Part shown: piece by piece, positions 1,177 to 58,696 of the stretch
How the letters are laid out: every line of letters starts with the position of its first letter
Numbering within the stretch: position 1 is the stretch's first letter
Virus record (IMG/VR): IMGVR_UViG_3300027782_000027
Location: 62,001 to 126,000 of that record
Length of the DNA stretch: 64,000 nt
Direction: 5' to 3' (one strand)
Notes under the pieces: model-generated
Database searches by the model: none
What the model was told of the DNA's origin: nothing
What the model saw: only the letters and a program-made list of their open reading frames with translations
Program-made: the position numbers and the translations under genes

Positions 1177-1183
1177 TATTTAT
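1177..1183 (+). promoter_or_regulatory. TATTTAT putative late promoter (portal)
   Basis: Motif ends 8 nt before ATG 1192. Confidence 0.65.
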
Positions 1184-1191
1184 ATTTTAGT

Positions 1192-3027
1192 ATGAGTGAA
1201 AATAAACTAACGGTATGGCAACGGTTATCCCAAACATTTGGACCCAATTCTCTTTTGGGGCAGGATTATCCTACGTACAAATATGATAAAAGTGAATTAT
1301 TAAAAACAACCTCTAAGTCTGAATATGATAGAGAAAAACTTCAGGCACAACAAACATATTATTTAGCTAACCAATGGGGTAGAATTGAAAATAATCTATA
1401 TACACAGGCGGTTTATTATGAACCAACTCGTTTATCATCTTTCTACGACTATGAGTCAATGGAATTTACCCCTGAAATTGGTGCCGCTCTTGACATATAC
1501 GCTGAAGAATCTACAACCATTGACCAAAATGGTTTTATGTTACAAATTTATTCTGAATCATCGAGAATTAAATCAATTCTTGGAGATTTGTTTAATAATG
1601 CTTTAGATATTAACACTAACTTACCTATGTGGATAAGAAACACATGTAAGTATGGTGATAATTTTGTATATCTTAAATTAGACCCTGAAAAAGGTATTAT
1701 AGGATGTATGCAATTACCAATCATTGAGATTGAACGATTGGAAGCGGGTATGGGAGCACACTCAACAGACTCAACAACTAATCCTGAAAAGAAACATTTG
1801 AAGTTCAAATGGAAACAAAAGGATTTAGAGTTTAATACTTGGGAAATTGCTCACTTTAGATTACTTGGTGATGATAGAAGACTTCCTTATGGAACTTCTA
1901 TGTTAGAAAAGGCTCGTCGTATTTGGAAACAATTATTGTTATCTGAAGATGCTATGTTAATCTACAGAACATCAAGAGCACCTGAAAGACGTGTATTTAA
2001 AGTATTTGTTGGAAACATGGATGATGCGGATGTTGAACCATATATCCAAAGATTTGCTAATAAGTTTAAGAGAAGTCAAACGGTAGACCATAAGACAGGT
2101 AATGTGGATATGAGATTTAATCAGATGGCTGTTGACCAAGATTATTTCGTTCCAGTTAGAGATACCGCACAAGCAAGTCCTATTGAGACATTGGCGGGAG
2201 CTCAAAACTTATCTGAAATTGCCGACATCGAGTATATCCAAAAGAAATTGTTAACGGCTCTTCGTGTTCCTAAAGCGTTTTTAGGATTTGAAGAAACTGT
2301 TGGTGATGGTAAGAACTTATCATTACAAGATATTCGTTTTGCAAGAACTATTAATAGAATTCAGAAAAATATGATTTCTGAATTAAATAAAATTGCAATC
2401 ATACACCTATTCATTTTAGGTTTTGAAGATGAGATATCAAACTTTAATTTAAGTTTAACAAATCCATCAACTCAAGCTGATTTGATGAAGATTGATGTAT
2501 GGAAAGAAAAAATTCTTCTATATAAAGATATGGTTGCTGACCCTGGTAGTGGTATTGCCGCAGTATCTATGTCATGGGCTAAGAAACATATTCTTGGATT
2601 TTCTGATGAAGAAATTAAACTTGATTTACAACAACAACGTATTGAAAGAGCTGTTGGTGAAGAACTTAAGAAAACTGCTGAGGTAATTACTCATACAGGA
2701 TTATTCGATAATCTTGATAAGTTGTATGGTAAAAAGGAAGGTGAACCTGCTGCTGCACCATCAGAAGGAGGGGCACCACCAGATGGTGGAATGAGTGATT
2801 TTGGAGGTGGTGAAAGTGCTCCACCTGAAGCTCCGGCCTCACCAGCTCCAGCACCACCTGAAGCCGCTCCAACAGTACCTGAAGGGTCGTATACCCGTAA
2901 TTCTGAACTTAATATAATATTAGAAAATACAGGAATGTTAAATGAAGATGAATTAATTGATTTAAATCGTGTTCAAGAATCTTTAGGGGAAATGGGTAAT
3001 CAATTAGATAAACTACTTAAAGGTTGA
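1192..3027 (+). CDS. Portal protein (T4 gp20-like)
   Basis: YESMEFTPEIGAALDIYAEES, EDAMLIYRTSRAPERRVFK and DIEYIQKKLLTALRVPK motifs; sits at the start of the head module. Confidence 0.93.
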   Translation: MSENKLTVWQRLSQTFGPNSLLGQDYPTYKYDKSELLKTTSKSEYDREKLQAQQTYYLANQWGRIENNLYTQAVYYEPTRLSSFYDYESMEFTPEIGAALDIYAEESTTIDQNGFMLQIYSESSRIKSILGDLFNNALDINTNLPMWIRNTCKYGDNFVYLKLDPEKGIIGCMQLPIIEIERLEAGMGAHSTDSTTNPEKKHLKFKWKQKDLEFNTWEIAHFRLLGDDRRLPYGTSMLEKARRIWKQLLLSEDAMLIYRTSRAPERRVFKVFVGNMDDADVEPYIQRFANKFKRSQTVDHKTGNVDMRFNQMAVDQDYFVPVRDTAQASPIETLAGAQNLSEIADIEYIQKKLLTALRVPKAFLGFEETVGDGKNLSLQDIRFARTINRIQKNMISELNKIAIIHLFILGFEDEISNFNLSLTNPSTQADLMKIDVWKEKILLYKDMVADPGSGIAAVSMSWAKKHILGFSDEEIKLDLQQQRIERAVGEELKKTAEVITHTGLFDNLDKLYGKKEGEPAAAPSEGGAPPDGGMSDFGGGESAPPEAPASPAPAPPEAAPTVPEGSYTRNSELNIILENTGMLNEDELIDLNRVQESLGEMGNQLDKLLKG

Positions 3028-3034
3028 TATTTAT
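3028..3034 (+). promoter_or_regulatory. TATTTAT putative late promoter
   Basis: In the intergenic gap before ATG 3051. Confidence 0.65.
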
Positions 3035-3050
3035 ATAAAAAAATATAAAC

Positions 3051-3761
3051 ATGAGATTCGGATTAATAAAAACATTAGTAGAAAATAAATTAATTGATTC
3101 CTTTGTTAAAGGAACTCTTAAAACTGATATGAGACTTTTTGAAAGAAAATTACTTAAAAATAGTGATTTTTGTAAATTAATGTCGATATATGATAATTTA
3201 AAAGAAAATAAAGAATTAGATAAAGAAACCGCAACTTATTTGGTTGATGATTTATCTAGTGAATTTAGACAAATTAAATTATCTGAGAATACAGTAAGTT
3301 TTATTAAAAGTTGGACTAAAGATATTGTTCTTGAAAACAAATACAAAACAATTGATGAGTTATTTTATGGTGACTTATTAAAACCTGAAAAGAAATCAAT
3401 TGCTAAAAAATCAATTGTTGAGTCTTTAGGTAAAAAACCAATAATTAAAGAAAGTAAAACTCAAAACGTCCCAATTAGTTCAATGTTAAAAGTTGCTAAT
3501 AAGACTGCTGAAAAATATTTAGAAAATTTAACTGAATCTGAAAGAAATTCTGTTAAAGAAATTTTAACTGCTGGTGATGAAAATTTAAAGACAAAATTTA
3601 CTGAATTAAAAGAAACAGCAATTAAAAAAATTGATACTCTTATTTCAGAATCAGATGAAGAATTAACTAAAGTTTTACTAGAAACAAAAGAAAGACTTAC
3701 AAATACAAAACATTCTAAAAAAGAATATATTAAATTAATGAATTTAACTCAAAATTTATAA
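3051..3761 (+). CDS. Hypothetical head-module protein (K/E-rich, helical)
   Basis: 236-aa ORF between portal and protease, with a late motif upstream. Confidence 0.75.
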   Translation: MRFGLIKTLVENKLIDSFVKGTLKTDMRLFERKLLKNSDFCKLMSIYDNLKENKELDKETATYLVDDLSSEFRQIKLSENTVSFIKSWTKDIVLENKYKTIDELFYGDLLKPEKKSIAKKSIVESLGKKPIIKESKTQNVPISSMLKVANKTAEKYLENLTESERNSVKEILTAGDENLKTKFTELKETAIKKIDTLISESDEELTKVLLETKERLTNTKHSKKEYIKLMNLTQNL

Positions 3762-3941
3762 TTCAGTATTTTTTGAATTTTTATAAATAGCATTATTTAA
3801 AATCTGACGTTTCATGTCAGATTTTTTTTTATACTCTTTCCTGTCTTGTAATTCTTTTATCATTTTAGTTTTTAAAACTTTTGATTTGAATTTTTTAAGG
3901 GATTTTTCTATATCCCCTTTATCAACTGTGATAATTAACAT
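3756..3941 (-). CDS. rpsU: Phage-encoded ribosomal protein bS21 (61 aa)
   Basis: MLIITVDKGDIEKSLKKFKSKVLKTKMIKELQDRKEYKKKSDMKRQILNNAIY matches the Bacteroidota bS21 pattern (MLII.V..G..I..ALK.FK.K...R..F.KPS..R...KA.Y). True start is ATG 3941, not 4040. Confidence 0.9.
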   Translation of the reverse strand: MLIITVDKGDIEKSLKKFKSKVLKTKMIKELQDRKEYKKKSDMKRQILNNAIYKNSKNTEL

Positions 3942-3945: not shown

Positions 3946-3974
3946 TTGACAACTATGCTTTTGTGTGTTATTAT
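3946..3974 (+). promoter_or_regulatory. Sigma70-type promoter TTGACA-N17-TATTAT
   Basis: -35 at 3946-3951 and -10 at 3969-3974, upstream of ATG 4012. Confidence 0.7.
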
Positions 3975-3980: not shown

Positions 3981-3987
3981 ATAAATA
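3981..3987 (-). promoter_or_regulatory. TATTTAT putative late promoter for bS21
   Basis: ATAAATA on the plus strand, ~40 nt upstream of the rpsU start. Confidence 0.6.
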
Positions 3988-4011: not shown

Positions 4012-4476
4012 ATGAAAAAAGGAAAAAGTTGCTCTATCAAAGGGTATAAAAAAATAAAATGTTCTTATGGGACTGTGGATTCTAAAAATTTTAAATCAAT
4101 ATACTTAAACATTCAATCTTGGGTTGAACCCAAATCTATTGAGGACTCTTGGATAAGACTTGTGTCTTACTTTAATAAACAAATAAAAAATACTATTGGG
4201 GATTATATTGATGTGGAATTTTTTTATGACAATTTTATAGTTGATTTAGACTTACGAACTTCAGGAATTGCATTAAAGAAAAGGTCTTTTATGAATCTTG
4301 AAATTACTTTTTTTATTAAAAAACCTATGGATTTTAAATCTCTTGAAATAAAAAATTCACTTAAAAAAATTGTTAGTTGTTTAGAATCTGATATTTTTAA
4401 CAAATCTAATCATTTTAGTTTTCATTTAAGTAAAAACGATAAAATCAAAAAAGAAAGTAAAATAGAATTTGTATAG
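4012..4476 (+). CDS. Hypothetical protein
   Basis: 154-aa ORF with its own sigma70-type promoter. Confidence 0.7.
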   Translation: MKKGKSCSIKGYKKIKCSYGTVDSKNFKSIYLNIQSWVEPKSIEDSWIRLVSYFNKQIKNTIGDYIDVEFFYDNFIVDLDLRTSGIALKKRSFMNLEITFFIKKPMDFKSLEIKNSLKKIVSCLESDIFNKSNHFSFHLSKNDKIKKESKIEFV

Positions 4477-4483
4477 TATTTAT
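4477..4483 (+). promoter_or_regulatory. TATTTAT putative late promoter (protease)
   Basis: In the gap before ATG 4499. Confidence 0.65.
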
Positions 4484-4498: not shown

Positions 4499-5218
4499 AT
4501 GCAAAATTACAAAATATTAGGTCCAAAAGAGACAGGAAAAGGTATTTTAATTGAGATGGACGCAGGTTATGTTTCTCCAACAGAAAAACATAATCAAACA
4601 TTCTTACAAGAAAGTAAGGATTTTAAAGATTATTCTAAACCATTTGAATTTTATGCCGTTCTACAAAAATATAATACACCGAATAGAAACGGTAGAATAT
4701 ATCCTGAAAGAATTTTAAAAAGAGAGTCCGAAAATTATATAAAGAATTATATCGGTAAAAAAACCTCTTTATCTGAACTTAACCACCCTGAATCTTCATT
4801 AATAGATTTAGATAGAGTATCACATATGATTACAGAGATGTGGTGGGATGGTAATGTTCTATTAGGTAAATTGTTACTTCTAACTTCACCAGGGTTCCAT
4901 GAAAGAGGTATCGTATCAACAAAGGGTGACCAAGCGGCAAACCTATTAAGACTAGGTGTGACGTTAGGTATATCATCAAGAGGGGTAGGTTCCTTAAAAA
5001 AAGTAGGTGAACAAAATGAAGTTCAGGATGATTTTGAATTAATTTGTTTTGACTTGGTGTCATCACCATCAACACCAGGAGCTTATTTATTTACTGAACC
5101 TGATGGAAGATTTGCGTTTGAGGAAAACCTAAAAGAAGAAAATGATATGAAAGCTGCAAGAACAGTTAACAAATCGCTTGATTTAATGGGAAGACTTACC
5201 GATTATTTAGGAAAATAA
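4499..5218 (+). CDS. Prohead maturation protease (T4 gp21-like)
   Basis: NRNGRIYP, ELNHPES, LGISSRGVGS and FDLVSSPSTPGA motifs. Confidence 0.93.
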   Translation: MQNYKILGPKETGKGILIEMDAGYVSPTEKHNQTFLQESKDFKDYSKPFEFYAVLQKYNTPNRNGRIYPERILKRESENYIKNYIGKKTSLSELNHPESSLIDLDRVSHMITEMWWDGNVLLGKLLLLTSPGFHERGIVSTKGDQAANLLRLGVTLGISSRGVGSLKKVGEQNEVQDDFELICFDLVSSPSTPGAYLFTEPDGRFAFEENLKEENDMKAARTVNKSLDLMGRLTDYLGK

Positions 5219-5224: not shown

Positions 5225-5440
5225 ATGGAAATGGACGAAAAATACTTTGTGGCTAAAATACAATACGATTTGCCAGATGAGAACACAGGAAAAATTAAAA
5301 AAGTAAGAGAAGAAAAACTTGTAAGAGGTTATTCTGTTACCGATGTTGAAGCTAAAGTTACTGAAGCTTACAAATCATTTAGTTATGATTGGAGAATCAC
5401 TTCAGTAAGTGAAAGTAAAATTGACGAAGTGTTTGAATAA
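5225..5440 (+). CDS. Small conserved protein, DUF4494-like
   Basis: YFVAKIQY...GKIKKVREEKLVRGYSVTDVEAKVTE resembles the recalled Bacteroidota DUF4494 pattern. Confidence 0.5.
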   Translation: MEMDEKYFVAKIQYDLPDENTGKIKKVREEKLVRGYSVTDVEAKVTEAYKSFSYDWRITSVSESKIDEVFE

Positions 5441-5531: not shown

Positions 5532-5538
5532 TATTTAT
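5532..5538 (+). promoter_or_regulatory. TATTTAT putative late promoter (scaffold and capsid)
   Basis: Lies after the terminator and before ATG 5557. Confidence 0.7.
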
Positions 5539-5556: not shown

Positions 5557-6951
5557 ATGGCAGAAAAAAACTTAGTTGAAGAGGCATTAATCCAAATACA
5601 AAATTTGGAAGAAGCTATCAATGAAAACGCAAAAGAAATACTTCATTCTACAATGAAAGAAGAAATTAGCGAATTAGTAAAAGAGTCTATGAAAAATGAG
5701 GCTGAAGAAGAAGATGAATTTGAAATCGAAGACGAGATTGAATCAGATGATGAATCAGAAGAAGAAGATGAGTCTGAAGAAGACGAATCGGAAGAAGAAG
5801 ACGAAGATTCTGAGGAAGGATTCGATATGATGGATTTATCTGACGAAGGTGACGAAGATGAAAATGAATTTGATGTTCAAGATTTATCTGACGAACCGAT
5901 GTCGACAGTTCTTAAAGCATTCAAACAAATGAAACCAACTGATTCTTTTGAAATCAAGAAAGAAGGTGATTTTATTCATTTAAAAGATGAAGAAGATGAA
6001 TACCTTATTCAAAACGGTTCAGAAGACGATGAGTTTGGTGAATTTGGTGAATCTCAAGAAGAAGAAACTGAAGAAATGGTTTATGAAATCGAAATGGATT
6101 CACTTGAAGAAGAAGAAACTGAAGAAATGGTTTACGAAATCGAAATGGATTCTAACGACTTTTCATTTGATGATGATGAAGAAGAAGAAGAATCTAAAGA
6201 AGAAGATTTCTATATGGAAGAAGAAATGAATCCTGTTATGGAAACATTTAAAGCAAAATTAGGTAACGGAGCCGCTAAAGTAGGTAATGCTAAAACAGCA
6301 TCTACTTTTAAGAAAACAAAAGGTGGTTTTAACGAAAAGAAAAAAGCCGTTAATCCAACTGCTCACACAGGAAAACCTAAATTTGAATTTAAAGAAGGTG
6401 ATGTGTTTGAAATGCCAAGTCAACGTGCTGAGAAATTCACTAAGGAAGAAGCTAAAGAAGCTGCACGTACTTATGGATTCGGTTCTAAAAAAGGACGTGG
6501 TTTGAGAAAAGCAATTACACCTAACAGAAATCTTACTTTTGAAAACCATGAAATCATGGAAGAAGTTGAAATGTTGAGAGCTAAAAATGAAGAGTATAGA
6601 AAAGCTTTAAATATGTTTAGAGATAAACTTAATGAAGTTGCGATATTCAATTCTAATCTTGCTTACGCTACAAGATTGTTCACAGAACATTCTACATCAA
6701 AACAAGAAAAAATTAACATTTTAAGAAGATTTGATTCAGCGGAATCCCTTAAAGAGTCTAAAGCCCTTTATAAAAATATCAAAGACGAATTATATATTGA
6801 CAACAATAAGAAATTCGTTAATGAGTCAATCGAAAGAGTTATTGAAAAAACTCCACAGTCAGGTTCAGCAGTTAATCTGATTGAATCTAAGACTTACGAG
6901 AATCCACAATTCTTGAGAATGAAAGACATTATGTCAAAAATAATAAAATAA
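5557..6951 (+). CDS. Prohead scaffold/core protein (gp22-like)
   Basis: Very acidic centre and coiled-coil C-terminus (LNEVAIFNSNLAYATRLF), directly before the capsid gene. Confidence 0.8.
   Translation: MAEKNLVEEALIQIQNLEEAINENAKEILHSTMKEEISELVKESMKNEAEEEDEFEIEDEIESDDESEEEDESEEDESEEEDEDSEEGFDMMDLSDEGDEDENEFDVQDLSDEPMSTVLKAFKQMKPTDSFEIKKEGDFIHLKDEEDEYLIQNGSEDDEFGEFGESQEEETEEMVYEIEMDSLEEEETEEMVYEIEMDSNDFSFDDDEEEEESKEEDFYMEEEMNPVMETFKAKLGNGAAKVGNAKTASTFKKTKGGFNEKKKAVNPTAHTGKPKFEFKEGDVFEMPSQRAEKFTKEEAKEAARTYGFGSKKGRGLRKAITPNRNLTFENHEIMEEVEMLRAKNEEYRKALNMFRDKLNEVAIFNSNLAYATRLFTEHSTSKQEKINILRRFDSAESLKESKALYKNIKDELYIDNNKKFVNESIERVIEKTPQSGSAVNLIESKTYENPQFLRMKDIMSKIIK
6058..6152 (+). repeat. 44-bp direct repeat with 51-bp period (EEETEEMVYEIEMDS x2)
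   Basis: Copies at 6058-6101 and 6109-6152 differ by one synonymous base. Confidence 0.9.
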
Positions 6952-9179: not shown

Positions 9180-9186
9180 TATTTAT
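9180..9186 (+). promoter_or_regulatory. TATTTAT putative late promoter
   Basis: Upstream of ATG 9212. Confidence 0.6.
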
Positions 9187-10201: not shown

Positions 10202-10606
10202 TTAACAATTTATTTTATTATAAATATTGTCAAGAGAATGATTAATTTGACTTTCTAATTCTTTTTCAATTTCCATTGCTCTATATTCCATTTCTCTACG
10301 GAACGCACTAACCAATTTATCCCATTGAGTTTTATTTAATTTAATAAAATAACTGTATGTATGATTAGTTACAGTAACTTGTCCACCATCCATTGTAACA
10401 AAAATACCTAATTTATCATTACGGATATATTTCTTATCTGATATGGGTGCGATTATGAGTTCAGAATCTTCCGAATGAATGAGTTTACGACATATGGTGG
10501 AACATTTCCTCACGTTAGACATATAGATGTCAAATTCGGTATCCTTTCGGTCTAATCTACGTAAGTATAGACGATATTTAATCCACAGTTTTTTTATTAT
10601 AGTCAT
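10202..10606 (-). CDS. Hypothetical early protein
   Basis: 134-aa ORF preceded by a Bacteroidota-type promoter. Confidence 0.7.
   Translation of the reverse strand: MTIIKKLWIKYRLYLRRLDRKDTEFDIYMSNVRKCSTICRKLIHSEDSELIIAPISDKKYIRNDKLGIFVTMDGGQVTVTNHTYSYFIKLNKTQWDKLVSAFRREMEYRAMEIEKELESQINHSLDNIYNKINC
10220..10226 (-). promoter_or_regulatory. TATTTAT putative late promoter
   Basis: Lies in the 3' end of the 10202 ORF, upstream of the 10191 start. Confidence 0.5.
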
Positions 10607-10625: not shown

Positions 10626-10656
10626 CAAATATACTACGATTTTTTAATAATCCAAA
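10626..10656 (-). promoter_or_regulatory. Bacteroidota housekeeping-type promoter TTTG-N19-TATATTTG
   Basis: -33 TTTG at 10656-10653, 19-nt spacer, -7 TAnnTTTG at 10633-10626, upstream of ATG 10606. Confidence 0.7.
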
Positions 10657-13208: not shown

Positions 13209-13215
13209 ATAAATA
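13209..13215 (-). promoter_or_regulatory. TATTTAT putative late promoter
   Basis: In the gap upstream of the 13196 start. Confidence 0.65.
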
Positions 13216-17337: not shown

Positions 17338-17344
17338 ATAAATA
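17338..17344 (-). promoter_or_regulatory. TATTTAT putative late promoter
   Basis: 4 nt upstream of the 17333 start. Confidence 0.6.
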
Positions 17345-17360: not shown

Positions 17361-18098
17361 TTACTCTTCCTTAACATCTATTAACGAAGAGTAAATTTTC
17401 TTGAATTTTTTAATTGAAGCTCTAATCTCTTTAGTTGACATATTTGTCATTTCACGAATAGATAATAAAATTACATTTTTATTAAATTTATTATTATCTG
17501 TTGCCGGAAATATCGTTTCGTAATTGTCTAAAATATCGATAAGTGCAAAACCTAATTTTAATTCATTATCATTTAATTCATCTTCTTCTATTGTTGTTTT
17601 AATATAATCTTTTAATATCGGAATTACATTATATTCTTGAATAGGTTCAATTTCTAAATAATAAATCATTTCAGGTCTATTTTCTAAATCACTTGAAATA
17701 TCCTCATATGAAATTTTTCTATTTGTTTCTTTTTGGTCTTTTAATATTTGGCCCATAAGATAATTCTTACAAATAGTTCCAAAATATGAGTAAGCTTTCT
17801 TTTCTTTTGAAGGACTAAATTTTTCAATTTTTGTCATCAAAAAAGAATGTGTGTCGGTATGAATTTCAGTAAAATTCATATCTTTTCTATACAATTTATA
17901 TCTTCTTATTATCGAAGATATCATCTTATCTAAAGGGAATCTTAAAAATTCATTATAAATTTTATTTTTTTCCTCAGAAGTAGATGCGGTTAGAAATAAT
18001 CTAACAGCATTTTCCTCTCTTATATCAAAATAATTTTCTGTGGCCGGTTTTTTCTTCTTAGTTAAAGAATCTTGAACAGACGTTGCACTTAAAATCAT
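17361..18098 (-). CDS. Phage sigma factor (T4 gp55-like late sigma, tentative)
   Basis: Sigma region-2-like segment IEKFSPSKEKKAYSYFGTICKNYL (compare gp55 F...AYFT.I..NAF). Confidence 0.6.
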   Translation of the reverse strand: MILSATSVQDSLTKKKKPATENYFDIREENAVRLFLTASTSEEKNKIYNEFLRFPLDKMISSIIRRYKLYRKDMNFTEIHTDTHSFLMTKIEKFSPSKEKKAYSYFGTICKNYLMGQILKDQKETNRKISYEDISSDLENRPEMIYYLEIEPIQEYNVIPILKDYIKTTIEEDELNDNELKLGFALIDILDNYETIFPATDNNKFNKNVILLSIREMTNMSTKEIRASIKKFKKIYSSLIDVKEE

Positions 18099-38256: not shown

Positions 38257-38263
38257 ATAAATA
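38257..38263 (-). promoter_or_regulatory. TATTTAT putative late promoter (divergent pair)
   Basis: Upstream of the 38242 start. Confidence 0.65.
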
Positions 38264-38275: not shown

Positions 38276-38282
38276 TATTTAT
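38276..38282 (+). promoter_or_regulatory. TATTTAT putative late promoter (divergent pair)
   Basis: 7 nt before ATG 38290. Confidence 0.65.
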
Positions 38283-41250: not shown

Positions 41251-41257
41251 TACCACA

Positions 41258-45615: not shown

Positions 45616-45622
45616 ATAAATA
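45616..45622 (-). promoter_or_regulatory. TATTTAT putative late promoter (neck)
   Basis: Upstream of the 45599 start. Confidence 0.65.
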
Positions 45623-47133: not shown

Positions 47134-47140
47134 ATAAATA
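47134..47140 (-). promoter_or_regulatory. TATTTAT putative late promoter (SOD fusion)
   Basis: 5 nt upstream of the 47128 start. Confidence 0.6.
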
Positions 47141-50851: not shown

Positions 50852-50868
50852 TTTATTCCTACTGATTT

Positions 50869-50875: not shown

Positions 50876-50911
50876 GTTAGTGACCCCATTAGTTTTTGAT
50901 TAAAATGACAA

Positions 50912-50918
50912 TATTTAT
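50912..50918 (+). promoter_or_regulatory. TATTTAT putative late promoter (sheath)
   Basis: Upstream of ATG 50954. Confidence 0.65.
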
Positions 50919-50953
50919 CAATAAATAAATTTTTAAAAACATTTAAAATAAAC

Positions 50954-53900: not shown

Positions 53901-54169
53901 TGATTTCAGCAGTAGCCGTAAGATTATTGTTCGAACAAAACGACAACTTGGTAAGACAACAGTTCTTAGATTCTGTTAATCCAATCTTAGATGCAATTCG
54001 TAGAGACAGAGGTTTATATGACTTCAGAGTTACTGTTCAAAATACACCTGAAGACTTAGATGCTAACCAAATGGTAGGTAAGATTTACATCAAACCAACT
54101 AAAGCTCTTGAATTCATTGACATTGAGTTCTTAATCACTCCAACAGGAGCGTCGTTTGAAAACATCTAA
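50954..54169 (+). CDS. Tail sheath protein (gp18-like, 1071 aa)
   Basis: FVSPGVYTSERDLS, WFATAGYTRG, INPI, WGNKTL, RINVRRLL and IKPTKALEFI motifs. Confidence 0.95.
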   Translation: MATSNKVFVSPGVYTSERDLSFVSQSVGVTTLGIVGETLKGPAFEPIFISSYGEFETYFGGTLPEKFVNTQIPKYEAAYIAKSYLQQSNQLFVTRVLGLSGYDAGSSWSITTVANVDCNTVGLTGGTSYSFNFTGSTASTTSIQFTSAVPSVISGNTYYSNNYTALDGTNSSILSDLRNQISSILSSNSLSASSAYYFGPVSGTQVNANVVAGLTAATNVFDVDSISASTIDYCSSVNDTWFYANFVPPATGEAYYGNSFYSRIGSLSGTAFGTSGSFTGTVSGFYYGFSGLTYSGYNDLVIATLRSRGVTNYSSTQHGPDYQVTGTSNVQMVCTGSYSAVTQNPFATFVISGLSYDSTSFSFETSFTPSNANFITKVFGVENFAKDQTEVPLFTEERYSTLLSYGYNKGFIRGLNCSLTALPEARNNSVDSIAYYLERYQTPQSPWVVSELRGNLVYRLFRAITISDGNDANAEIKISIANISFNNGTFDLIVRDFFDTDSNPVVLEKFTNCSINPGENNYIAKKVGSSDGEFAIKSKFIMVEVNTEAPVDALPCGFEGFETRKYTGAKSPFQIYKTKYDYPGEVIYNPPFGTTSGADNSVQSSGDNIRRTYLGISSAVAFSSDSPGYDPDFFQYKGMPNPTTTTCTEANHVTWGLQTKGFHMDSGATSVTIANVYSNSGQTAFYVGAGAFSSEPTSQTSPYYFLYSRKFTFLVQGGFDGWDIYREYRTNADRYRLGNTGYKQGALAGCVPYTDATGWGAFKQITVGDNTVDYANTDYYAYLLGVQQFANPEVTNINVLVTPGIDYVNNGDLVEQVIDVVENDRADSIYICTSPDFNLLQPSTSMDNLIYPQEAVDNLENTNIDSNYTATYYPWVLTRDTVNNTQIYIPATAEATRNFALTDNIAFPWFATAGYTRGVVNAVRARKRLTQEDRDTLYKGRINPIATFNDVGTVIWGNKTLQIRESALDRINVRRLLLQARKLISAVAVRLLFEQNDNLVRQQFLDSVNPILDAIRRDRGLYDFRVTVQNTPEDLDANQMVGKIYIKPTKALEFIDIEFLITPTGASFENI

Positions 54170-54187
54170 TCAACGATAAAATAATTG

Positions 54188-54214
54188 AAAACCCTCACGA
54201 AAGTGGGGGTTTTT
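54188..54214 (+). terminator. Rho-independent terminator
   Basis: ACCCTCAC-GAAA-GTGGGGGT followed by a T-tract. Confidence 0.8.
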
Positions 54215-54225
54215 ATTTTACATAA

Positions 54226-54232
54226 TATTTAT
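54226..54232 (+). promoter_or_regulatory. TATTTAT putative late promoter
   Basis: 4 nt before ATG 54237. Confidence 0.6.
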
Positions 54233-54236
54233 AGAT

Positions 54237-55052
54237 ATGAAAATATTTTTAGTAGAAGAATTTGATGAAGAAATCACACCCGATTTAAAATATTACGCTT
54301 TTGACTGGGACGATAATATTCTTACAATGCCGACACAAATAATACTTCGTACAGAGGATAATGAAGAAGTTGGTATGTCAACTGAAGACTTTGCGGAATA
54401 TCGTGTTAAGGTTGGAGTTGAACCTTTTGAATATAAGAAAAAAACTGTTGTAGGGTTTGCTGACGACCCGTTTAGGAACTTTGGGACTAAAGGCGATAAA
54501 AGATTCATCATTGACTCTATGATGGCAAAACCAGGTCCTGCATGGGATGATTTTGAAGAAGCAATTAATGGGGGTTCTATTTTTTCAATAGTTACTGCAA
54601 GGGGACACTCACCATTGGCTTTACGTAGGGCAATTGAAAATATGATTGAAACTAATTTTAAGGGAATATCTAAAAAAGAATTGGTTAAAAATTTAAGAAA
54701 ATTTAGAAAGTTTGCGGGTGAAGAGGATATGAAGGATAAAGAACTTATAAATGCTTATATGGATATGAATAAGTATTATCCTGTAACATTCGGAGCCGGG
54801 TCAGCACAAAGTCCTGAGGTTGGTAAAGTCGCAGCTTTAAAAGAATTTCAACAATATGTAAAATATTTAGCTGGTAGATTAAATAAACCAATAATGTTTA
54901 AAGATGATATTAGTAATAGATTCATACCTAAAATAGGATTTTCAGATGATGATTTAAGAAATCTGGAAAAAGTTAAAGATGAATTATCTAAAGACCCAGA
55001 AAATATTATTCAAACAATATCAACACATGGAGGAGAAAAGAAATTATACTAA
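54237..55052 (+). CDS. HAD-like phosphatase-fold protein
   Basis: YYAFDWDDNIL (DxD), IVTARGH and IGFSDDD (HAD motifs I, II and IV). Confidence 0.65.
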   Translation: MKIFLVEEFDEEITPDLKYYAFDWDDNILTMPTQIILRTEDNEEVGMSTEDFAEYRVKVGVEPFEYKKKTVVGFADDPFRNFGTKGDKRFIIDSMMAKPGPAWDDFEEAINGGSIFSIVTARGHSPLALRRAIENMIETNFKGISKKELVKNLRKFRKFAGEEDMKDKELINAYMDMNKYYPVTFGAGSAQSPEVGKVAALKEFQQYVKYLAGRLNKPIMFKDDISNRFIPKIGFSDDDLRNLEKVKDELSKDPENIIQTISTHGGEKKLY

Positions 55053-55059
55053 TATTTAT
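55053..55059 (+). promoter_or_regulatory. TATTTAT putative late promoter (tube, distal)
   Basis: Intergenic copy. Confidence 0.5.
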
Positions 55060-55127
55060 AAACTGGACTTATAGCAAGTTTGACTAAAAAAAAGTTTAAA
55101 GTAAATAGAAAAATATTTAGTTGACAC

Positions 55128-55134
55128 TATTTAT
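55128..55134 (+). promoter_or_regulatory. TATTTAT putative late promoter (tube, proximal)
   Basis: Upstream of ATG 55169. Confidence 0.65.
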
Positions 55135-55168
55135 AATAAAATAAAAGAAAATTTAAAAACAAAATGAT

Positions 55169-55657
55169 ATGGCTGATTTACTGATGAAAATGCCTTTTCC
55201 GTATGAACCCAAAAAGAAAAATAGATTTATTCTAAGATTTCCTTCTGAATTGGGTATAAACGAATGGTTTGTAGAAACAACAAATAGACCTAAAATAACA
55301 ATTGGAAGTATTGATATTCCTTTTCTAAACACTAAAAGATATGTTGCAGGAAAATACGAATGGGGAACTATCGGTGTTACACTACGTGACCCAATTGGAC
55401 CTTCAGCGGCTCAAGCAATGATGGAATGGGTTCGTTTACACGCTGAATCAGTAACGGGTCGTATGGGTTACGCGGCAGGATATAAGAAAGACGTTGAACT
55501 TGAAATGTTAGACCCGACAGGCGTTGTTATTGAAAAGTGGTCTTTAATCCAATGTTTCTTGACTGACGTTGATTTTGGTTCTCTTGGTTATGCAGACGAC
55601 GCATTAGCTAATATTACATTAACACTTCGTCCTGACTATTGTGTATTACTTTACTAA
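55169..55657 (+). CDS. Tail tube protein (gp19-like)
   Basis: EPKKKNRF...RP......GKYEWGTI.VTLRDPI...YKKD..LEMLDPTG..IEKW; follows the sheath gene. Confidence 0.88.
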   Translation: MADLLMKMPFPYEPKKKNRFILRFPSELGINEWFVETTNRPKITIGSIDIPFLNTKRYVAGKYEWGTIGVTLRDPIGPSAAQAMMEWVRLHAESVTGRMGYAAGYKKDVELEMLDPTGVVIEKWSLIQCFLTDVDFGSLGYADDALANITLTLRPDYCVLLY

Positions 55658-55681
55658 TACTATTACAAATATTATAATAAG

Positions 55682-55704
55682 ACCCACAGAAATGTGGGTT
55701 TTTT
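55682..55704 (+). terminator. Rho-independent terminator
   Basis: ACCCACA-GAAA-TGTGGGT followed by a T-tract. Confidence 0.85.
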
Positions 55705-55751
55705 ATTTACAATAAATTAAACTATTATATGTTATAAACAAAAACGAATTT

Positions 55752-56504
55752 ATGGAAGAACAGAATATTAACCAAACTAATTTTAATTTACCACATGATG
55801 TATTAACTTTACCAAGTGGAGGTAAATTTTATAAAAACAAAAAAAAATCGGTTAAAGTTGGTTTTTTAACTGCTGCTGACGAAAATATTTTGGCAAGCGC
55901 TTCTAATATGTCTGGAGACCAAGTTATCCAACAATTAATTCGGGCTAAAGTTTATGAACCTGATTTGAAGGTTGACGATATGTTAGAAGGTGATATTGAA
56001 GCGATTTTAGTTTTTTTAAGAAATACTGCGTTTGGTCCTGAATATAACGTTAATTTAACTGACCCTGAAACAGGTAATAAATTTGAATCAACTTTTTCTT
56101 TGGATGAGTTAAATTTTTCTAAACCCGAAGTTGACCCTGATGAAAATGGACACTACACTGCAACACTTCCAAAAAGTGGAAAAACCGTAAAATTAAAATT
56201 ATTAACTTTTGGTGATAAAAAAGAATTATCGGATAGAGAAAATTCATATCCCAAAAACATGGTAACACCTAAAGTTACTTGGAGATTATTAAAACAAATT
56301 ATTAGTATTGATAATAATGAAGACAAAACAGAAATTGCTAAATTTGTTGAAAAAATGCCAATAATGGATTCTAAATTCATTACCAATTTTATAAACAAAA
56401 ATCAACCGTCATTAGACTTAATCAAAGAAATTATAGCCCCATCTGGAAAAAGTGTACTCACGCGAGTTACCTTTGGGGCGGAGTTTTTTCGTCCTTTCTT
56501 CTGA
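55752..56504 (+). CDS. Tail assembly chaperone / baseplate hub assembly protein (gp26-like)
   Basis: LTLPSGGKFY, LTAADENIL and DIEAILVFLRNTAFGPEY motifs; between tube and tape measure. Confidence 0.75.
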   Translation: MEEQNINQTNFNLPHDVLTLPSGGKFYKNKKKSVKVGFLTAADENILASASNMSGDQVIQQLIRAKVYEPDLKVDDMLEGDIEAILVFLRNTAFGPEYNVNLTDPETGNKFESTFSLDELNFSKPEVDPDENGHYTATLPKSGKTVKLKLLTFGDKKELSDRENSYPKNMVTPKVTWRLLKQIISIDNNEDKTEIAKFVEKMPIMDSKFITNFINKNQPSLDLIKEIIAPSGKSVLTRVTFGAEFFRPFF

Positions 56505-56646
56505 TTATACCAAACATCTTTTAGACCAATATCTTTTATTGAGTAGGTTTTTACATATTCCGTATTCGGATTTTATGTTAATCCCTACGTCTCATCGTAC
56601 TTATTTGGTTAATACTGTCATAGAAATGAATACTCCTAAAAGTTAA
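56485..56646 (+). CDS. Downstream chaperone ORF ('T'/gp51-like), probably reached by +1 frameshift
   Basis: +1 frame is open across the upstream stop with no ATG before the conserved part (only GTG at 56452). LLDQYLLL.....YSDFM.IPTSHRTYLV resembles gp51-like small ORFs. Confidence 0.65.
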   Translation, partial: FFVLSSDYTKHLLDQYLLLSRFLHIPYSDFMLIPTSHRTYLVNTVIEMNTPKS

Positions 56647-56654
56647 ACCTAAAG

Positions 56655-56661
56655 TATTTAT
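56655..56661 (+). promoter_or_regulatory. TATTTAT putative late promoter (tape measure)
   Basis: Upstream of ATG 56675. Confidence 0.65.
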
Positions 56662-56674
56662 TTAAAAAATACGT

Positions 56675-58672
56675 ATGTTACTAGAAGATGCTTCAAAAAA
56701 AATTGCCTTAGACGCTGAGGAAACTAAACTTATAGGTTCTAATTTACTTGATTTAGCAGCAAATATTAGTAACGTACTAAAACCAGCTCAAGATTTAATC
56801 GTTAGTTTTGCTGAGGTAGGTAAAAGAATTGGGGAAGCTGACAAAGGTGCATTTCAGTTGGTCGGAAAAATGGGGTTAAATGAAAAGGCCGCTGAAAGAA
56901 TTAAAAGAACTTTTGGTGAAGCGTATAATGAATTAGGTTTAATTGGTGCTGATTTTGGAACTTTCGTTAAAACACAAGAAGAATTTAACACCGCGACAGG
57001 ACGTAATGTAATTCTAACAAAAGAAAATTTAAAAGACTTAATTTCTACTAATAAAGTTACAGGAGTTGCCTCGGCAACTTTATTAACAAGTTTTCAAAAC
57101 GCTGGTTTTTCAATGTCACAAATTAGTACAAATATGGAGAAAGTGGTTACACTTGCTTCAAGTATGGGGGTTAATAGTCAGGTTGTGTCTAAATCTGTAA
57201 CTGAAAATTTAGAAAAATTAAATAAATTTGGTTTTGGTAATGGGGTGGAAGGTTTGGCAAAAATGGCGGCAAAGGCAGCATCTATGAGAATAGACATGAA
57301 ATCAGCCTTTGCAGTTGCGGATGACATCTTCTCGAGAGGACCGGAGGCTGCTATAGAAATTTCTGCGACTCTACAACGGATGGGTGCAACATCAGGGGCG
57401 TTACTTGACCCATTAAAACTTATGGATTTGGCTCAAAACAATATTCCTGAGTTACAGAACCAACTTGTTGATTTATCTAAACAATATACAGTATTTAACG
57501 AAGATACTAAACAATTTGAAATCATGCCAGGTGCCAGAAAGCAATTGAATGAAGTTGCAAAATCTTTAGGTATGAGTTATGATGAATTTGCTAGAATGTC
57601 TTTGGAAAGTTCAAAAATGGAAAAAAAACTTTCTGAAATTGATTTTAGCCGATTTAACATGAATATGACTGAAGAACAAAAATCTTTGATTACAAACATG
57701 GCAGAAATGAATACTCAGGGTGAGTATGTTGTTAAAGTAAAAGATGAAAAAGGTGTTGAAATTGAAAAAGCTATAAGTGAATTAAACCAAGGTGATTTAG
57801 AAGAACTACAAAAACAAACTTTAACTGAAGGTGAAAAAATGTATGATATCGCTTCACAAAGTTTGAGTCAACTTGAAAGAATTGGGAATTTACAAGAAAC
57901 TTTTGCTAATTCTTATAGTACTATGTTGGCAACAAGTGAATATGGAAATACCTACTTACAAACATTAGTTGCGGGTAATGAAAAATTATATGGTGTAAAT
58001 GACGCTTCAAAAAATGAAACTTTAAAACTTTTTAATTTAAATAATGAGGCCATGAAGCAAAGTAATGCTGATATTGCAAATTTAACTAAATTAGCTCTTG
58101 AAAAAGCTCAAGAGGGAAAATTTGCTGAATCTGCGGTTCTTTTTAAAGAACTTGGTGAACAAAGTTTTGGTCAAATGAAAAAAGGTTTGGACGCGAGCTA
58201 CCAAGACAAAACTGTTGTAAGTATCCTAACTGACGCTGGAATTAATGTAATAGCTAAAACAGGCGCGGAATTAGTTAACACTTTTGTAAATTTTTTAAAA
58301 ACTGGAGATTTAACTAGCTTTATACCTAAAAAAGACATTGCAATCACCGCTGACGGAATGCACTACTCTTTAGATAAAGGTGATATGTTGATGGCACTTA
58401 ACCAAGAAAAATTAGCTTCCGCAATCGGAGCATCATCACCTTCACCAATCTTACCAACTGCGGTTGAAAATAATTACGCTTCTAATGAAGTAAAAAAAGA
58501 ATCAACTCCAAAAGAACTTAATGTGAATATAAACTTTACACATGAGTCTAAAGGTGCTGATATAAATGTTGCTCAAGAATTTTCAAAATCTTTAAGAGAT
58601 AATACATCATTACAACAACAACTTGTTCAACAGATAAGTGAAAATATTAAAAACTACGGTTTGACTGCCTGA
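56675..58672 (+). CDS. Tape measure protein
   Basis: Helical, A/K/E/L-rich 665-aa protein directly after the chaperone pair. Confidence 0.75.
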   Translation: MLLEDASKKIALDAEETKLIGSNLLDLAANISNVLKPAQDLIVSFAEVGKRIGEADKGAFQLVGKMGLNEKAAERIKRTFGEAYNELGLIGADFGTFVKTQEEFNTATGRNVILTKENLKDLISTNKVTGVASATLLTSFQNAGFSMSQISTNMEKVVTLASSMGVNSQVVSKSVTENLEKLNKFGFGNGVEGLAKMAAKAASMRIDMKSAFAVADDIFSRGPEAAIEISATLQRMGATSGALLDPLKLMDLAQNNIPELQNQLVDLSKQYTVFNEDTKQFEIMPGARKQLNEVAKSLGMSYDEFARMSLESSKMEKKLSEIDFSRFNMNMTEEQKSLITNMAEMNTQGEYVVKVKDEKGVEIEKAISELNQGDLEELQKQTLTEGEKMYDIASQSLSQLERIGNLQETFANSYSTMLATSEYGNTYLQTLVAGNEKLYGVNDASKNETLKLFNLNNEAMKQSNADIANLTKLALEKAQEGKFAESAVLFKELGEQSFGQMKKGLDASYQDKTVVSILTDAGINVIAKTGAELVNTFVNFLKTGDLTSFIPKKDIAITADGMHYSLDKGDMLMALNQEKLASAIGASSPSPILPTAVENNYASNEVKKESTPKELNVNINFTHESKGADINVAQEFSKSLRDNTSLQQQLVQQISENIKNYGLTA

Positions 58673-58689
58673 TAAAATCTGTTTCATTC

Positions 58690-58696
58690 TATTTAT
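58690..58696 (+). promoter_or_regulatory. TATTTAT putative late promoter
   Basis: Upstream of TTG 58708 / ATG 58711. Confidence 0.65.

What the first reader, a model, noticed from the sequence alone, without database searches (positions are those of the whole stretch)
1177..58696. 21 copies of TATTTAT on the sense strand upstream of late genes, the reverse complement of the T4 late promoter
Seen: TATTTAT occurs upstream of portal, protease, scaffold, sheath, tube, tape measure, baseplate, neck, bS21, SOD and others (13 plus-strand and 8 minus-strand copies listed). It is always in the gene's orientation and has no -35 element. It is absent from the upstream regions of the polymerase and tail chaperone and from the glycosylation-operon gaps I read. 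Established: T4 gp55 reads TATAAATA. Inference: a late promoter class read by the gp55-like sigma at 17361..18098. The heptamer is common by chance in AT-rich DNA, so the argument rests on position and strand.
Basis: partly seen in the sequence, partly recalled or inferred. Interest (0 to 1): 0.65.

Follow-up and report, generated by a model that had tools for sequence, protein, structure and literature searches.

The report
Conserved TATTTAT late promoter of bS21 jumbo phages
A strict seven-base signal, TATTTAT, sits just upstream of the virion, lysis and bS21 genes of this 241-kb Bacteroidota phage and its distant relatives; it is most likely the start signal for late transcription, read by a phage-made sigma factor, and a variant of the classic phage T4 late promoter.

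Summary
The window has 52 TATTTAT copies against about 56 expected by chance. Eighteen of them lie 4-39 nt upstream of a start codon in the gene's own orientation, against about 3 in shuffled upstream regions. In the whole 240,759-bp phage genome there are 80 such copies against 15.9±3.6 (z=18), and TATTTAT is the top upstream 7-mer. In spacers between genes on the same strand the count is 51 sense to 8 antisense.

The extended signal is A-TATTTAT-N4-AAA with no -35 element. It often follows a terminator directly. Single-base variants are not enriched. The sites are conserved gene by gene in 80 relatives. The motif recurs in Flavobacterium phage immuto and Microcystis phage Mel-JY01, whose portals are only 37% identical to this one. 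Both encode a homologue of ORF 17361-18098 but no ordinary sigma-70 protein.

That ORF folds as a sigma factor. Its N-terminal domain matches T4 gp55, and it has an extra C-terminal domain. Genes with the motif are mostly virion, packaging and lysis genes; replication genes mostly lack it.

Best reading: a phage-specific late promoter, TAT-TT-AT against T4's TAT-AA-AT, with about 40% of sites placed to give leaderless mRNAs. No transcript 5' ends were available, so timing and the reading factor are inferred.

The parts
1177..1183 (+). TATTTAT 8 nt upstream of the portal gene 1192-3027
   Evidence: Kept in 42/55 distinct orthologous upstream regions; its position shifts between 8-9 nt and 28-31 nt from the start codon.
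3028..3034 (+). TATTTAT 16 nt upstream of ORF 3051-3761
   Evidence: Kept in 42/49 relatives.
3981..3987 (-). TATTTAT 39 nt upstream of the bS21 gene (true gene 3756-3941, minus strand)
   Evidence: PF01165 match E=1.1e-10; sequence and start codon. Kept in 10/18 relatives, so this is a weaker site.
4477..4483 (+). TATTTAT 15 nt upstream of the prohead protease gene 4499-5218
   Evidence: Kept in 45/47 relatives.
5532..5538 (+). TATTTAT 18 nt upstream of ORF 5557-6951, which precedes the major capsid gene 6978-8867; the capsid gene has no motif of its own
   Evidence: Kept in 16/19 relatives, while the capsid gene has it in 0/15. Matches the published co-transcription of MCP with its upstream gene.
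9180..9186 (+). TATTTAT 19 nt upstream of ORF 9206-9949
10220..10226 (-). TATTTAT 28 nt upstream of ORF 9946-10191(-), lying inside the 3' end of the preceding gene
13209..13215 (-). TATTTAT 12 nt upstream of ORF 11700-13196(-)
17338..17344 (-). TATTTAT 4 nt upstream of the 120-aa ORF 16971-17333(-), directly after the sigma gene
   Evidence: The same arrangement (sigma gene, then the motif, then a small gene) is found in immuto, Mel-JY01 and two distant contigs.
17361..18098 (-). Candidate late sigma factor (245 aa): a sigma-2/gp55-like N-domain plus a C-terminal helical domain
   Evidence: phrog_234 E 8.7e-4 and 7.4e-5. Profile against PDB: SigA E=0.0025, gp55 E=0.086. AF2 pLDDT 90.9. VIA: gp55 Z=10.9, other sigmas Z 9-11. 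Homologues in immuto and Mel-JY01.
38257..38263 (-). TATTTAT 14 nt upstream of ORF 37373-38242(-), in a 47-nt divergent spacer
38276..38282 (+). TATTTAT 7 nt upstream of ORF 38290-41214(+), in the same divergent spacer
45616..45622 (-). TATTTAT 16 nt upstream of the neck/Ad2-like gene 44469-45599(-)
47134..47140 (-). TATTTAT 5 nt upstream of the Fe/Mn-SOD fusion gene 45623-47128(-); leaderless geometry
50912..50918 (+). TATTTAT 35 nt upstream of the tail sheath gene 50954-54169
54226..54232 (+). TATTTAT 4 nt upstream of ORF 54237-55052, 10 nt after the terminator hairpin 54186-54215
55128..55134 (+). TATTTAT 34 nt upstream of the tail tube gene 55169-55657
56655..56661 (+). TATTTAT 13 nt upstream of ORF 56675-58672
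58690..58696 (+). TATTTAT 11 nt upstream of ORF 58708-63543 (1611 aa)
10626..10656 (-). Contrast class: a Bacteroidota host-type promoter, TTTG-N19-TATATTTG, 19 nt upstream of ORF 10202-10606(-)

Best explanation
TATTTAT is the -10-like core of a phage-specific promoter class; the full signal is A-TATTTAT-N4-AAA with no -35 element.

Inferred mechanism: host core RNA polymerase is redirected by the phage sigma encoded at 17361-18098, a distant, two-domain relative of T4 gp55. The holoenzyme melts the A/T heptamer and starts at the A-run 5-7 nt downstream. This transcribes the virion, packaging, lysis and bS21 genes late in infection as many short units, each bounded by its own promoter and often by an intrinsic terminator.

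Aligned on T4's TATAAATA (-13 to -6), the motif keeps T-13, A-12, T-11, A-8 and T-7. These include the two adenines that gp55 flips into deep pockets. It differs only at -10 and -9.

About 40% of sites put the A of the ATG on the predicted start position, which would give leaderless mRNAs. The rest would give A-rich leaders of about 6-12 nt without a Shine-Dalgarno sequence, as expected for a Bacteroidota host.

The sigma gene lies at the end of a long operon that lacks the motif, so the order would be earlier promoters, then sigma, then TATTTAT promoters.

Shown: enrichment, strand bias, strictness, conservation, co-occurrence with the sigma family, and sigma fold. Inferred: promoter activity, start site, timing, and which factor reads the motif.
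For: Enrichment and orientation:
- 80 sense copies upstream against 15.9±3.6, and the top upstream 7-mer.
- Window: 17 against 2.9±1.6.
- Co-directional spacers: 51 sense to 8 antisense.

Strictness:
- None of the 21 single-mismatch variants shows comparable enrichment. The few mildly over-represented ones fit terminator T-runs and the host-type box.

Architecture:
- A at -1 in 49/74 sites.
- A at motif positions 12/13/14 in 38/36/36 of 42 leadered sites.
- The ATG falls on those same positions in 25 of 32 short-spacer sites, and no site has a spacing of 9-10 nt.
- No -35 element; the only enriched upstream words are terminator stems and T-runs.
- Terminators lie directly before some sites.
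- Divergent spacers of 32-47 nt contain one motif for each direction and nothing else conserved.

Conservation:
- Pooled relatives: 275 sense to 68 antisense.
- Per gene: protease 45/47, ORF 3051 42/49, portal 42/55, ORF 5557 16/19, against 0/50 and 0/15 for genes that lack it here.
- The portal footprint keeps the motif while the flanks diverge.

Distant phages:
- Immuto and Mel-JY01 have the motif upstream of the terminase, portal and tail genes.
- In Mel-JY01 a GGAG ribosome site lies between the motif and the ATG.
- Both phages have a homologue of the sigma ORF (E 2e-36 and 3.9e-29) and no Sigma70_r2 protein.
- The motif follows the sigma gene directly in five lineages.

Sigma identity.

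Function:
- 10 late-function unit heads carry the motif and 1 lacks it; 1-2 non-late heads carry it and 8 lack it (Fisher p about 0.001-0.002).

External RNA data for this clade (PMC9723584):
- bS21 and the structural genes are expressed together.
- The region is not one operon.
- MCP is co-transcribed with its upstream gene, and the protease with its downstream gene. This is exactly the motif map.

Geometry against gp55 contacts: PMC7892883.

Control: the same pipeline recovers ATAAATA/TATAAAT in T4.
Against: - No transcript 5' ends or time course were available; no RNA run was listed.
- The motif also precedes a DnaB-like helicase/RNR unit and many small paralogous genes of unknown function, so 'late only' is not shown.
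- Sequence similarity to gp55 is weak (E 0.086 against PDB gp55; phrog_234 E about 1e-4).
- The protein has a C-terminal domain that gp55 lacks. The fold of that domain is not resolved above noise (Z about 5-6).
- No gp45-type clamp was detected in this 82%-complete record.
- A second sigma exists in the genome.
- bS21 keeps a perfect motif in only 10/18 relatives, and the terminase in 15/40.
- The function table is small and hand-curated.
Confidence: 0.7

Rival explanations
1. TATTTAT is a promoter read by the host primary sigma (Bacteroidota sigma-A) as a variant of its -7 box, and is used throughout infection rather than late.
For: The host-type box TAnnTTTG shares T1, A2, T5 and T7 with the motif. 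The phage clearly uses host-type promoters elsewhere. The motif precedes some non-structural genes.
Against: A at position 6 is invariant, and TATTTTT, the variant closer to the host box, is not enriched (13 observed against 20 expected). There is no TTTG element 19-21 nt upstream. The same heptamer is used by Mel-JY01, deposited as a Microcystis phage and using GGAG ribosome sites, so it tracks the phage and not the host phylum. Host-type and TATTTAT promoters sit side by side driving different genes.
Confidence: 0.1
2. The motif is read by the phage's other sigma, the 266-aa sigma-70-family protein (regions 1.2, 2 and 4) at genome 201399-202199, and not by ORF 17361-18098.
For: It is an unambiguous sigma (Sigma70_r2 E=1.2e-17, r4 E=2.8e-16). 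It is conserved across the clade.
Against: Immuto and Mel-JY01 carry the motif upstream of their late genes but have no Sigma70_r2 match at E<=1 in their complete genomes. A factor with region 4 would be expected to use a -35 element, and none is present. A separate conserved TTTGACw-N16-18-TAnnnT promoter type exists that would suit such a factor or the host sigma.
Confidence: 0.08
3. TATTTAT acts in RNA (UAUUUAU) as a processing site or a ribosome-loading signal in front of genes, and is not a promoter.
For: An RNA signal would also be sense-strand specific and lie close to start codons. Bacteroidota lack Shine-Dalgarno pairing and use A/U-rich leaders.
Against: The distance to the start codon ranges from 4 to about 39 nt here and is 25-35 nt in Mel-JY01, with a normal GGAG site in between. 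Many sites follow intrinsic terminators directly. Others are the only conserved element in 32-47 nt divergent spacers, where a promoter must exist for each direction. The downstream N4-AAA block fits an initiation site. The motif resembles -10 elements and co-occurs with a sigma family.
Confidence: 0.05
4. It is a by-product of AT-rich intergenic composition with no specific function.
For: The total count in the window equals chance. The genome is 32% GC.
Against: z=18 against dinucleotide shuffles of the same upstream regions. Strand ratio of 51 to 8. No enrichment of one-mismatch neighbours. Gene-by-gene conservation across relatives, including consistent absence at some genes.
Confidence: 0.01

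Closest known systems
Bacteriophage T4 late promoter TATAAATA, read by gp55 with gp33 and the gp45 sliding clamp
   Same: An A/T-only element of the same length at the -10 position. It is strictly conserved, sense-strand specific and has no -35 element. It drives virion genes on either strand as many units. Aligned base for base, T-13, A-12, T-11, A-8 and T-7 are identical, including the two adenines that gp55 inserts into deep pockets (PMC2988020; PMC7892883). The candidate factor's N-domain superposes on gp55 (Z 10.9).
   Different: The two central bases are TT instead of AA. Sense-strand TATAAATA is a minor word here (15 against 80). The factor is 245 aa with an added C-terminal domain. No gp45-type clamp or gp33 homologue was found. 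Many sites lie so close to the ATG that leaderless mRNAs are predicted.
Variant late-promoter consensus sequences predicted in other T4-related phages (KVP40, 44RR, S-PM2; Aeh1 with a/gC at -13/-12)
   Same: In silico consensus motifs upstream of late genes that vary a little from TATAAATA while a gp55 homologue is kept (review PMC2988020).
   Different: Those variants change the upstream edge. Here the centre of the element changes, and the sigma is far more divergent.
Bacteroidota primary-sigma promoters (-33 TTTG, -7 TAnnTTTG)
   Same: Both are found in this genome. Both are A/T-rich elements close to the start of Shine-Dalgarno-less genes.
   Different: TATTTAT lacks the TTTG end and the -33 element. 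It heads virion, packaging and lysis genes. Host-type sites head genes of mostly unknown function, one of them the FtsH-like protease.
bS21-encoding freshwater Bacteroidota phage clades (Chen et al. 2022, ISME Commun, PMC9723584)
   Same: The same clade by gene content and context: bS21 on the reverse strand among the terminase, portal, protease and MCP genes; genomes up to 331 kb; Flavobacteriia hosts predicted. Their RNA mapping agrees with the transcription units predicted from the motif.
   Different: That paper contains no occurrence of 'promoter', 'sigma' or 'motif', so the regulatory signal and factor are not described there.

Membership tests
T4-type (gp55-dependent) late promoter | A/T-only -10-like element, about 8 bp, sense-strand specific, tightly conserved | tested here: met
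   Strict heptamer. 51 sense to 8 antisense. z=18.
T4-type (gp55-dependent) late promoter | Sequence TATAAATA | tested here: not met
   The motif is TATTTAT(A). Sense-strand TATAAATA occurs 15 times against 80.
T4-type (gp55-dependent) late promoter | No -35 element | tested here: met
   The logo and the word search upstream found only terminator remnants.
T4-type (gp55-dependent) late promoter | Drives late (virion, packaging, lysis) genes, active late in infection | tested here: inconclusive
   Association with gene function, Fisher p about 0.001. Published co-expression of bS21 with structural genes. No time course; no RNA run was listed.
T4-type (gp55-dependent) late promoter | Activation through the gp45 sliding clamp and gp33 | tested here: inconclusive
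   PF02916 and PF09116 gave no match in the 82%-complete record. gp33 was not searchable. A conserved 120-aa gene after the sigma gene has no assignable function.
gp55 family (PHROG 234) for ORF 17361-18098 | Significant sequence match to gp55 profiles | tested here: inconclusive
   phrog_234 E 8.7e-4 and 7.4e-5 over 60 residues. Family profile against PDB gp55 E=0.086, ranking below SigA at E=0.0025.
gp55 family (PHROG 234) for ORF 17361-18098 | Sigma region-2-like fold with conserved base-pocket residues | tested here: met
   VIA Z=10.9, 118 residues aligned to 7d7c_F. The family's Tyr105 aligns with gp55 Y97, Phe with F86 and Asp82 with D74. gp55 H95 is replaced by Tyr.
gp55 family (PHROG 234) for ORF 17361-18098 | Single-domain protein of about 185 aa without region 4 | tested here: not met
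   245 aa with a confident second helical domain at 158-244. Whole-chain alignments reach regions 2 to 4 of other sigmas. The domain alone gives sigma-4 hits only at Z about 5.
Pfam sigma-70 family for ORF 17361-18098 | Sigma70_r2 above the gathering score | tested here: not met
   No Pfam hit. E=0.028, 12.5 bits against a 24-bit cut-off.
Bacteroidota sigma-A promoter | -7 box TAnnTTTG with -33 TTTG 19-21 nt upstream | tested here: not met
   Position 6 is an invariant A and there is no terminal G. No upstream TTTG.

The most novel reading that the evidence does not exclude
The late promoter fixes the 5' end of late mRNAs. About 40% would start at the AUG itself (leaderless), and the rest would carry A-rich leaders of about 6-12 nt. 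The phage's own bS21 is transcribed from the same promoter class. In this reading, bS21 retunes the Shine-Dalgarno-blind Bacteroidota ribosome to favour exactly these transcripts. The promoter, the sigma and the ribosomal protein would then form one coupled late-expression module, conserved in an abundant clade of lake phages.
Probability: 0.15. Interest if true: 0.8.

Novelty: new variant of a known kind. Interest (0 to 1): 0.6.

Why it matters
It gives a concrete, testable regulatory code for a very abundant and mostly uncultured clade of jumbo phages of freshwater Flavobacteriia. That code is one strict heptamer plus one candidate sigma, whose family has more than 1000 clusters at 50% identity.

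It explains the transcription units seen in published metatranscriptomes, and why the reverse-strand bS21 gene is expressed with the virion genes.

It shows how far the T4 late-promoter logic extends. The outer bases and the two flipped adenines are kept while the centre of the element changes, and the same signal serves phages whose listed hosts are in different phyla.

The motif can be used to annotate late genes and transcription units in metagenomic phage genomes. A cultured member, phage immuto on Flavobacterium sp. LMO8, makes direct experiments possible.

Tried and rejected
- RNA evidence: no RNA sequencing run was listed for window 50001-59000.
- Literature: searches for TATTTAT with phage promoter, Flavobacterium phage late promoter, TAnnTTTG with phage, and immuto found no description of the motif.
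- Sigma by single sequence: phmmer against PDB gave only a chance hit. Foldseek gave no match at E<=0.001, although nearly all top rows were sigmas.
- C-terminal domain folded alone: the best match is Z 6.1 to an unrelated domain and sigma region 4 reaches only Z about 5, so it is not resolved.
- Upstream element: a position-specific logo and 4-6-mer enrichment found nothing but terminator remnants.
- Degenerate copies: single-mismatch variants are not enriched.
- E. coli-type TTGACA/TATAAT scan: not enriched in the window and only about 3-fold in non-coding DNA genome-wide.
- Phage RNA polymerase: no beta-subunit domain was found. The single-subunit search was uninformative because its control did not ring.
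- gp45-type clamp: not found.
- 120-aa gene downstream of the sigma gene: no PHROG, Pfam, PDB or Atlas lead.
- The idea that ORF 5225-5440 is bS21 was rejected. It matches DUF4494 and shows no similarity to Mel-JY01 S21. The real bS21 is 3756-3941(-).

Full report
**What the window is.**
The window is bases 62,001-126,000 of a single 240,759-bp virus record with 32% GC, 82% complete by CheckV. It is a distant T4-like myophage. The window holds the portal, prohead protease, major capsid, sheath, tube, baseplate hub and neck genes. It also holds a DNA polymerase, a helicase and a long glycosyltransferase-rich operon. The nearest deposited phages by portal protein are Microcystis phage Mel-JY01 (37.6% identity) and Flavobacterium phage vB_FspM_immuto (37%). 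The gene context matches the bS21-encoding freshwater Bacteroidota phage clades of Chen et al. 2022 (PMC9723584): bS21 on the reverse strand among the terminase, portal, protease and MCP genes. Start codons are preceded by A-rich sequence without Shine-Dalgarno motifs. Canonical Bacteroidota promoters, TTTG-N19-20-TAnnTTTG, are present. Both features fit a Flavobacteriia-type host.

**Checking the observation.**
- Total count: TATTTAT occurs 52 times in the window against 55.6±7.8 in shuffles, so the total is chance.
- Position: 17 sense copies lie within 60 nt upstream of the 62 modelled genes, against 2.9±1.6 in 1000 dinucleotide shuffles of those same regions, maximum 9.
- An 18th site appeared when I corrected the bS21 gene. 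The S21 domain (PF01165, E=1.1e-10) lies at 3777-3932(-), the likely start is the ATG at 3941, and TATTTAT sits at 3987-3981(-), 39 nt upstream.
- Genome-wide: 80 sense copies lie upstream of 261 ORFs against 15.9±3.6 (z=18). TATTTAT is the most enriched of all 7-mers upstream (78 observed against 4.6 expected from genome frequency).
- Orientation: the reverse complement could belong to a divergent neighbour, so I tested orientation only in spacers between co-directional genes. The count there is 51 sense to 8 antisense (p=9e-9). In divergent spacers it is 24 to 19, as expected if each direction has its own site.
- Control: the same pipeline applied to T4's late region returns ATAAATA and TATAAAT as the top words.

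**Anatomy of the signal.**
- The heptamer is strict. None of its 21 one-mismatch variants shows comparable enrichment. The few mildly over-represented ones are explained by terminator T-runs (TTTTTAT) and by the host-type box (TATTTGT).
- A precedes the motif in 49 of 74 sites.
- In the 42 sites with at least 11 nt between the motif and the start codon, motif positions 12, 13 and 14 are A in 38, 36 and 36 cases. Neighbouring positions are A in about 53% of cases. The signal is therefore A-TATTTAT-N4-AAA.
- No -35-type element exists. The only enriched words upstream are G+C-rich stems and T-runs of intrinsic terminators. Several window sites sit a few bases after a predicted terminator, for example 54186-54215 followed by the motif at 54226.
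- The distance from the motif to the start codon is bimodal: 4-8 nt (peak at 5-6; 32 sites) and 11-19 nt (peak at 14), with none at 9-10.
- In 25 of the 32 short-spacer sites the A of the ATG falls on motif positions 12-14, the same three positions that are A in the leadered class.
- The simplest reading is that transcription starts at positions 12-14. The short class would then give leaderless mRNAs and the long class leaders of roughly 6-12 nt. This is inference; no 5' ends were available.

**Conservation.**
- In 80 IMG/VR loci with portals 71-100% identical, the pooled upstream regions hold 275 sense and 68 antisense copies.
- Gene by gene, the motif is kept where the window has it: protease 45/47 distinct upstream sequences, ORF 3051 42/49, portal 42/55 (plus 6 TATTTAA), ORF 5557 16/19.
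- It is absent where the window lacks it: ORF 4012 0/50, major capsid gene 0/15.
- The portal alignment shows the heptamer preserved while the flanks diverge, and its position jumping between about 8 and about 29 nt from the ATG.
- The cultured Flavobacterium phage immuto and Mel-JY01 use the same heptamer upstream of their terminase, portal, tail and other late genes.
- In Mel-JY01 the motif lies 25-35 nt upstream, with a GGAG ribosome site in between. This argues against a translational role and for a signal that travels with the phage rather than with the host.

**Which genes carry it.**
Heads of transcription units with the motif:
- terminase large subunit, portal, prohead protease, neck Ad2-like protein, sheath and tube;
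- a baseplate wedge subunit and a virion structural protein;
- two endolysin/amidase-like proteins, a Fe/Mn-SOD fusion and bS21.

Heads without it:
- DNA polymerase, SNF2-like helicase, SSB, UvsX-like recombinase and primase;
- FtsH-like protease, a glycosyltransferase and a methyltransferase.

Exceptions are a DnaB-like helicase/RNR unit (motif present) and the baseplate hub gene (motif absent). A small hand-made table gives Fisher p of about 0.001-0.002.

Outside the window, many small paralogous genes also carry the motif. Their function is unknown, so 'late only' is not demonstrated.

Independent support comes from the metatranscriptomes of Chen et al. bS21 and the structural genes are expressed together. 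The conserved region is not one operon. MCP with its upstream gene, and the protease with its downstream gene, appear co-transcribed. That is the pattern the motif map predicts: motif before ORF 5557 but not before MCP, and before the protease but not before ORF 5225.

**Who reads it.**
- ORF 17361-18098(-) has only weak family matches: phrog_234 'late sigma transcription factor' at E 8.7e-4 and 7.4e-5, and Sigma70_r2 at E 0.028.
- It belongs to a large family: 1075 representative clusters at E<=0.001 and more than 8000 close relatives.
- A profile of 71 members hits sigma factors only at the top of the PDB list: SigA region 2 at E 0.0025-0.009, an ECF sigma at 0.02, and T4 gp55 at 0.086.
- The AlphaFold model is confident (pLDDT 90.9) and has two helical domains, 26-139 and 158-244.
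- VIA-align ranks T4 gp55 (7d7c_F) second at Z 10.9 over 118 residues. Other sigmas score Z 9-11, with alignments that also cover the C-terminal domain. Foldseek alone gave no hit at E<=0.001.
- The C-terminal domain folded alone matches sigma region 4 only at Z about 5, within noise.
- In the profile alignment, the family's nearly invariant Tyr105 falls on gp55 Tyr97, which stacks on the flipped A-12. Phe falls on F86 and Asp82 on D74. His95 of gp55's -9 pocket is Tyr here.
- The genome also encodes a full sigma-70-type factor (regions 1.2, 2 and 4; 266 aa) at 201399-202199.
- The decisive comparison is co-occurrence. The complete genomes of immuto and Mel-JY01 each have a homologue of the 245-aa protein (E 2e-36 and 3.9e-29) and no Sigma70_r2 match at all, yet both use TATTTAT.
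- In the window, in immuto, in Mel-JY01 and in two contigs carrying 31-32%-identical family members, the sigma gene is followed at once by TATTTAT and a small gene. A third distant contig has TATTTAC/TATTTAA there.
- No phage RNA polymerase domain was found.

**Relation to T4.**
T4 late promoters are TATAAATA at -13 to -6 with no -35 element (PMC2988020). gp55 flips A-12, A-9 and A-8 of the non-template strand into pockets, the first and last of them deep (PMC7892883). Aligned on the same strand, TATTTAT(A) keeps T-13, A-12, T-11, A-8, T-7 (and often A-6), and differs at -10 and -9. I therefore class this as working like a T4 late promoter with an altered centre. Membership of the factor in the gp55 family is unproven: it has an extra domain, the sequence match is weak, and no gp45-type clamp was found in this incomplete record.

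**Rivals.**
- Host sigma-A reading: disfavoured by the invariant A6, the missing TTTG and -33 element, and the motif's presence in Mel-JY01.
- The second sigma: disfavoured by its absence from immuto and Mel-JY01.
- An RNA-level signal: disfavoured by variable spacing, by sites placed directly after terminators, and by 32-47-nt divergent spacers that contain nothing else conserved.
- Composition: excluded by the statistics.

**Verdict.**
This is a new variant of a known kind of system, undescribed in the literature I could search, and directly testable in a cultured phage-host pair.

Noticed in passing
window 3756-3941 (-): The bS21 gene is a 61-aa ORF on the reverse strand between ORF 3051-3761 and ORF 4012-4476. 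Naive ORF calling extends it to a TTG at 4040, and I had first discarded it. A terminator-like hairpin for the plus strand (3799-3825) lies inside it.
   Followed up: yes
window 3946-3974 (+), upstream of ORF 4012-4476: A second conserved promoter type, TTTTTGAC(A/T/C)-N16-18-TAnnnT followed by AATAAAC, is present in 49 of 50 distinct upstream regions of orthologues of this gene (the 'bS21_CN' gene of Chen et al.). Similar TTTGACT boxes precede the SSB gene (genome 132962) and the DNA polymerase gene (window about 41222). It may be a host-type or middle promoter, or the target of the 266-aa phage sigma.
   Followed up: partly
G000:C1:201399-202199 (+) = L002:1330-2130, outside the window: A full sigma-70-family factor (regions 1.2, 2 and 4; 266 aa) is encoded by the phage and conserved at 69-98% identity across the clade. 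A host-type promoter (TTTG-N19-TATCTTTG) lies at 200810-200840, just upstream of the preceding ORF.
   Followed up: partly
window 10626-10656 (-); genome 10390, 15070, 26567, 35365, 36738, 225738: Canonical Bacteroidota promoters, TTTG-N18-21-TAnnTTTG (usually TATATTTG followed by TAG). 10 of 26 matches are intergenic although only 4.7% of the genome is. At genome 35.4 kb and 36.7 kb they sit back to back with TATTTAT sites that drive the opposite gene.
   Followed up: partly
window 16971-17333 (-): A 120-aa protein with an acidic C-terminus is encoded directly after the sigma gene, behind its own TATTTAT. The same arrangement occurs in immuto, Mel-JY01 and two distant contigs. It is a possible sigma partner or co-activator, but no family, PDB or Atlas lead was found.
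   Followed up: partly
genome 2.5-38 kb (L085, L086), outside the window: About 21 small genes in paralogous families share N-termini such as MKKVVRLTESDL or MKYLITESxL. Many follow a terminator plus TATTTAT at leaderless spacing. The (L/I)-T-E motif recalls, from my own memory of T4 biology, the L/I-x-E cleavage sites of capsid-targeted internal proteins. This was not tested.
   Followed up: partly
window 41250-41285 (+): Two small hairpins (one is UUCCGA...UCGGAA) lie in the 94-nt leader of the DNA polymerase gene. MFE is -11.6 kcal/mol with z=-2.0 against shuffles. They could be a translational operator like that of T4 gene 43, or nothing.
   Followed up: partly
window 45623-47128 (-): The superoxide dismutase is a 501-aa fusion. 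The Fe/Mn-SOD domains occupy residues 36-226, followed by about 270 residues with no match. It is under a TATTTAT site at leaderless spacing.
   Followed up: no
window 50688-50953: The 266-nt gap before the sheath gene holds three TATTTAT copies (50869-, 50912+, 50921-) and only doubtful minus-strand ORFs of about 50 aa. The two minus-strand copies have no clear gene.
   Followed up: no
window 6978-8867 (+) and genome 168785-183085 (+): The major capsid protein is 629 aa, and the capsid-fold match begins only at residue 295, so it has a long N-terminal extension. Elsewhere the genome has a single 4766-aa ORF.
   Followed up: no
window 5225-5440 (+): A 71-aa ORF after the protease gene matches the C-terminal half of DUF4494 (E=3e-10). 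It occupies the position where Mel-JY01 has its S21 gene, but shows no similarity to it.
   Followed up: partly
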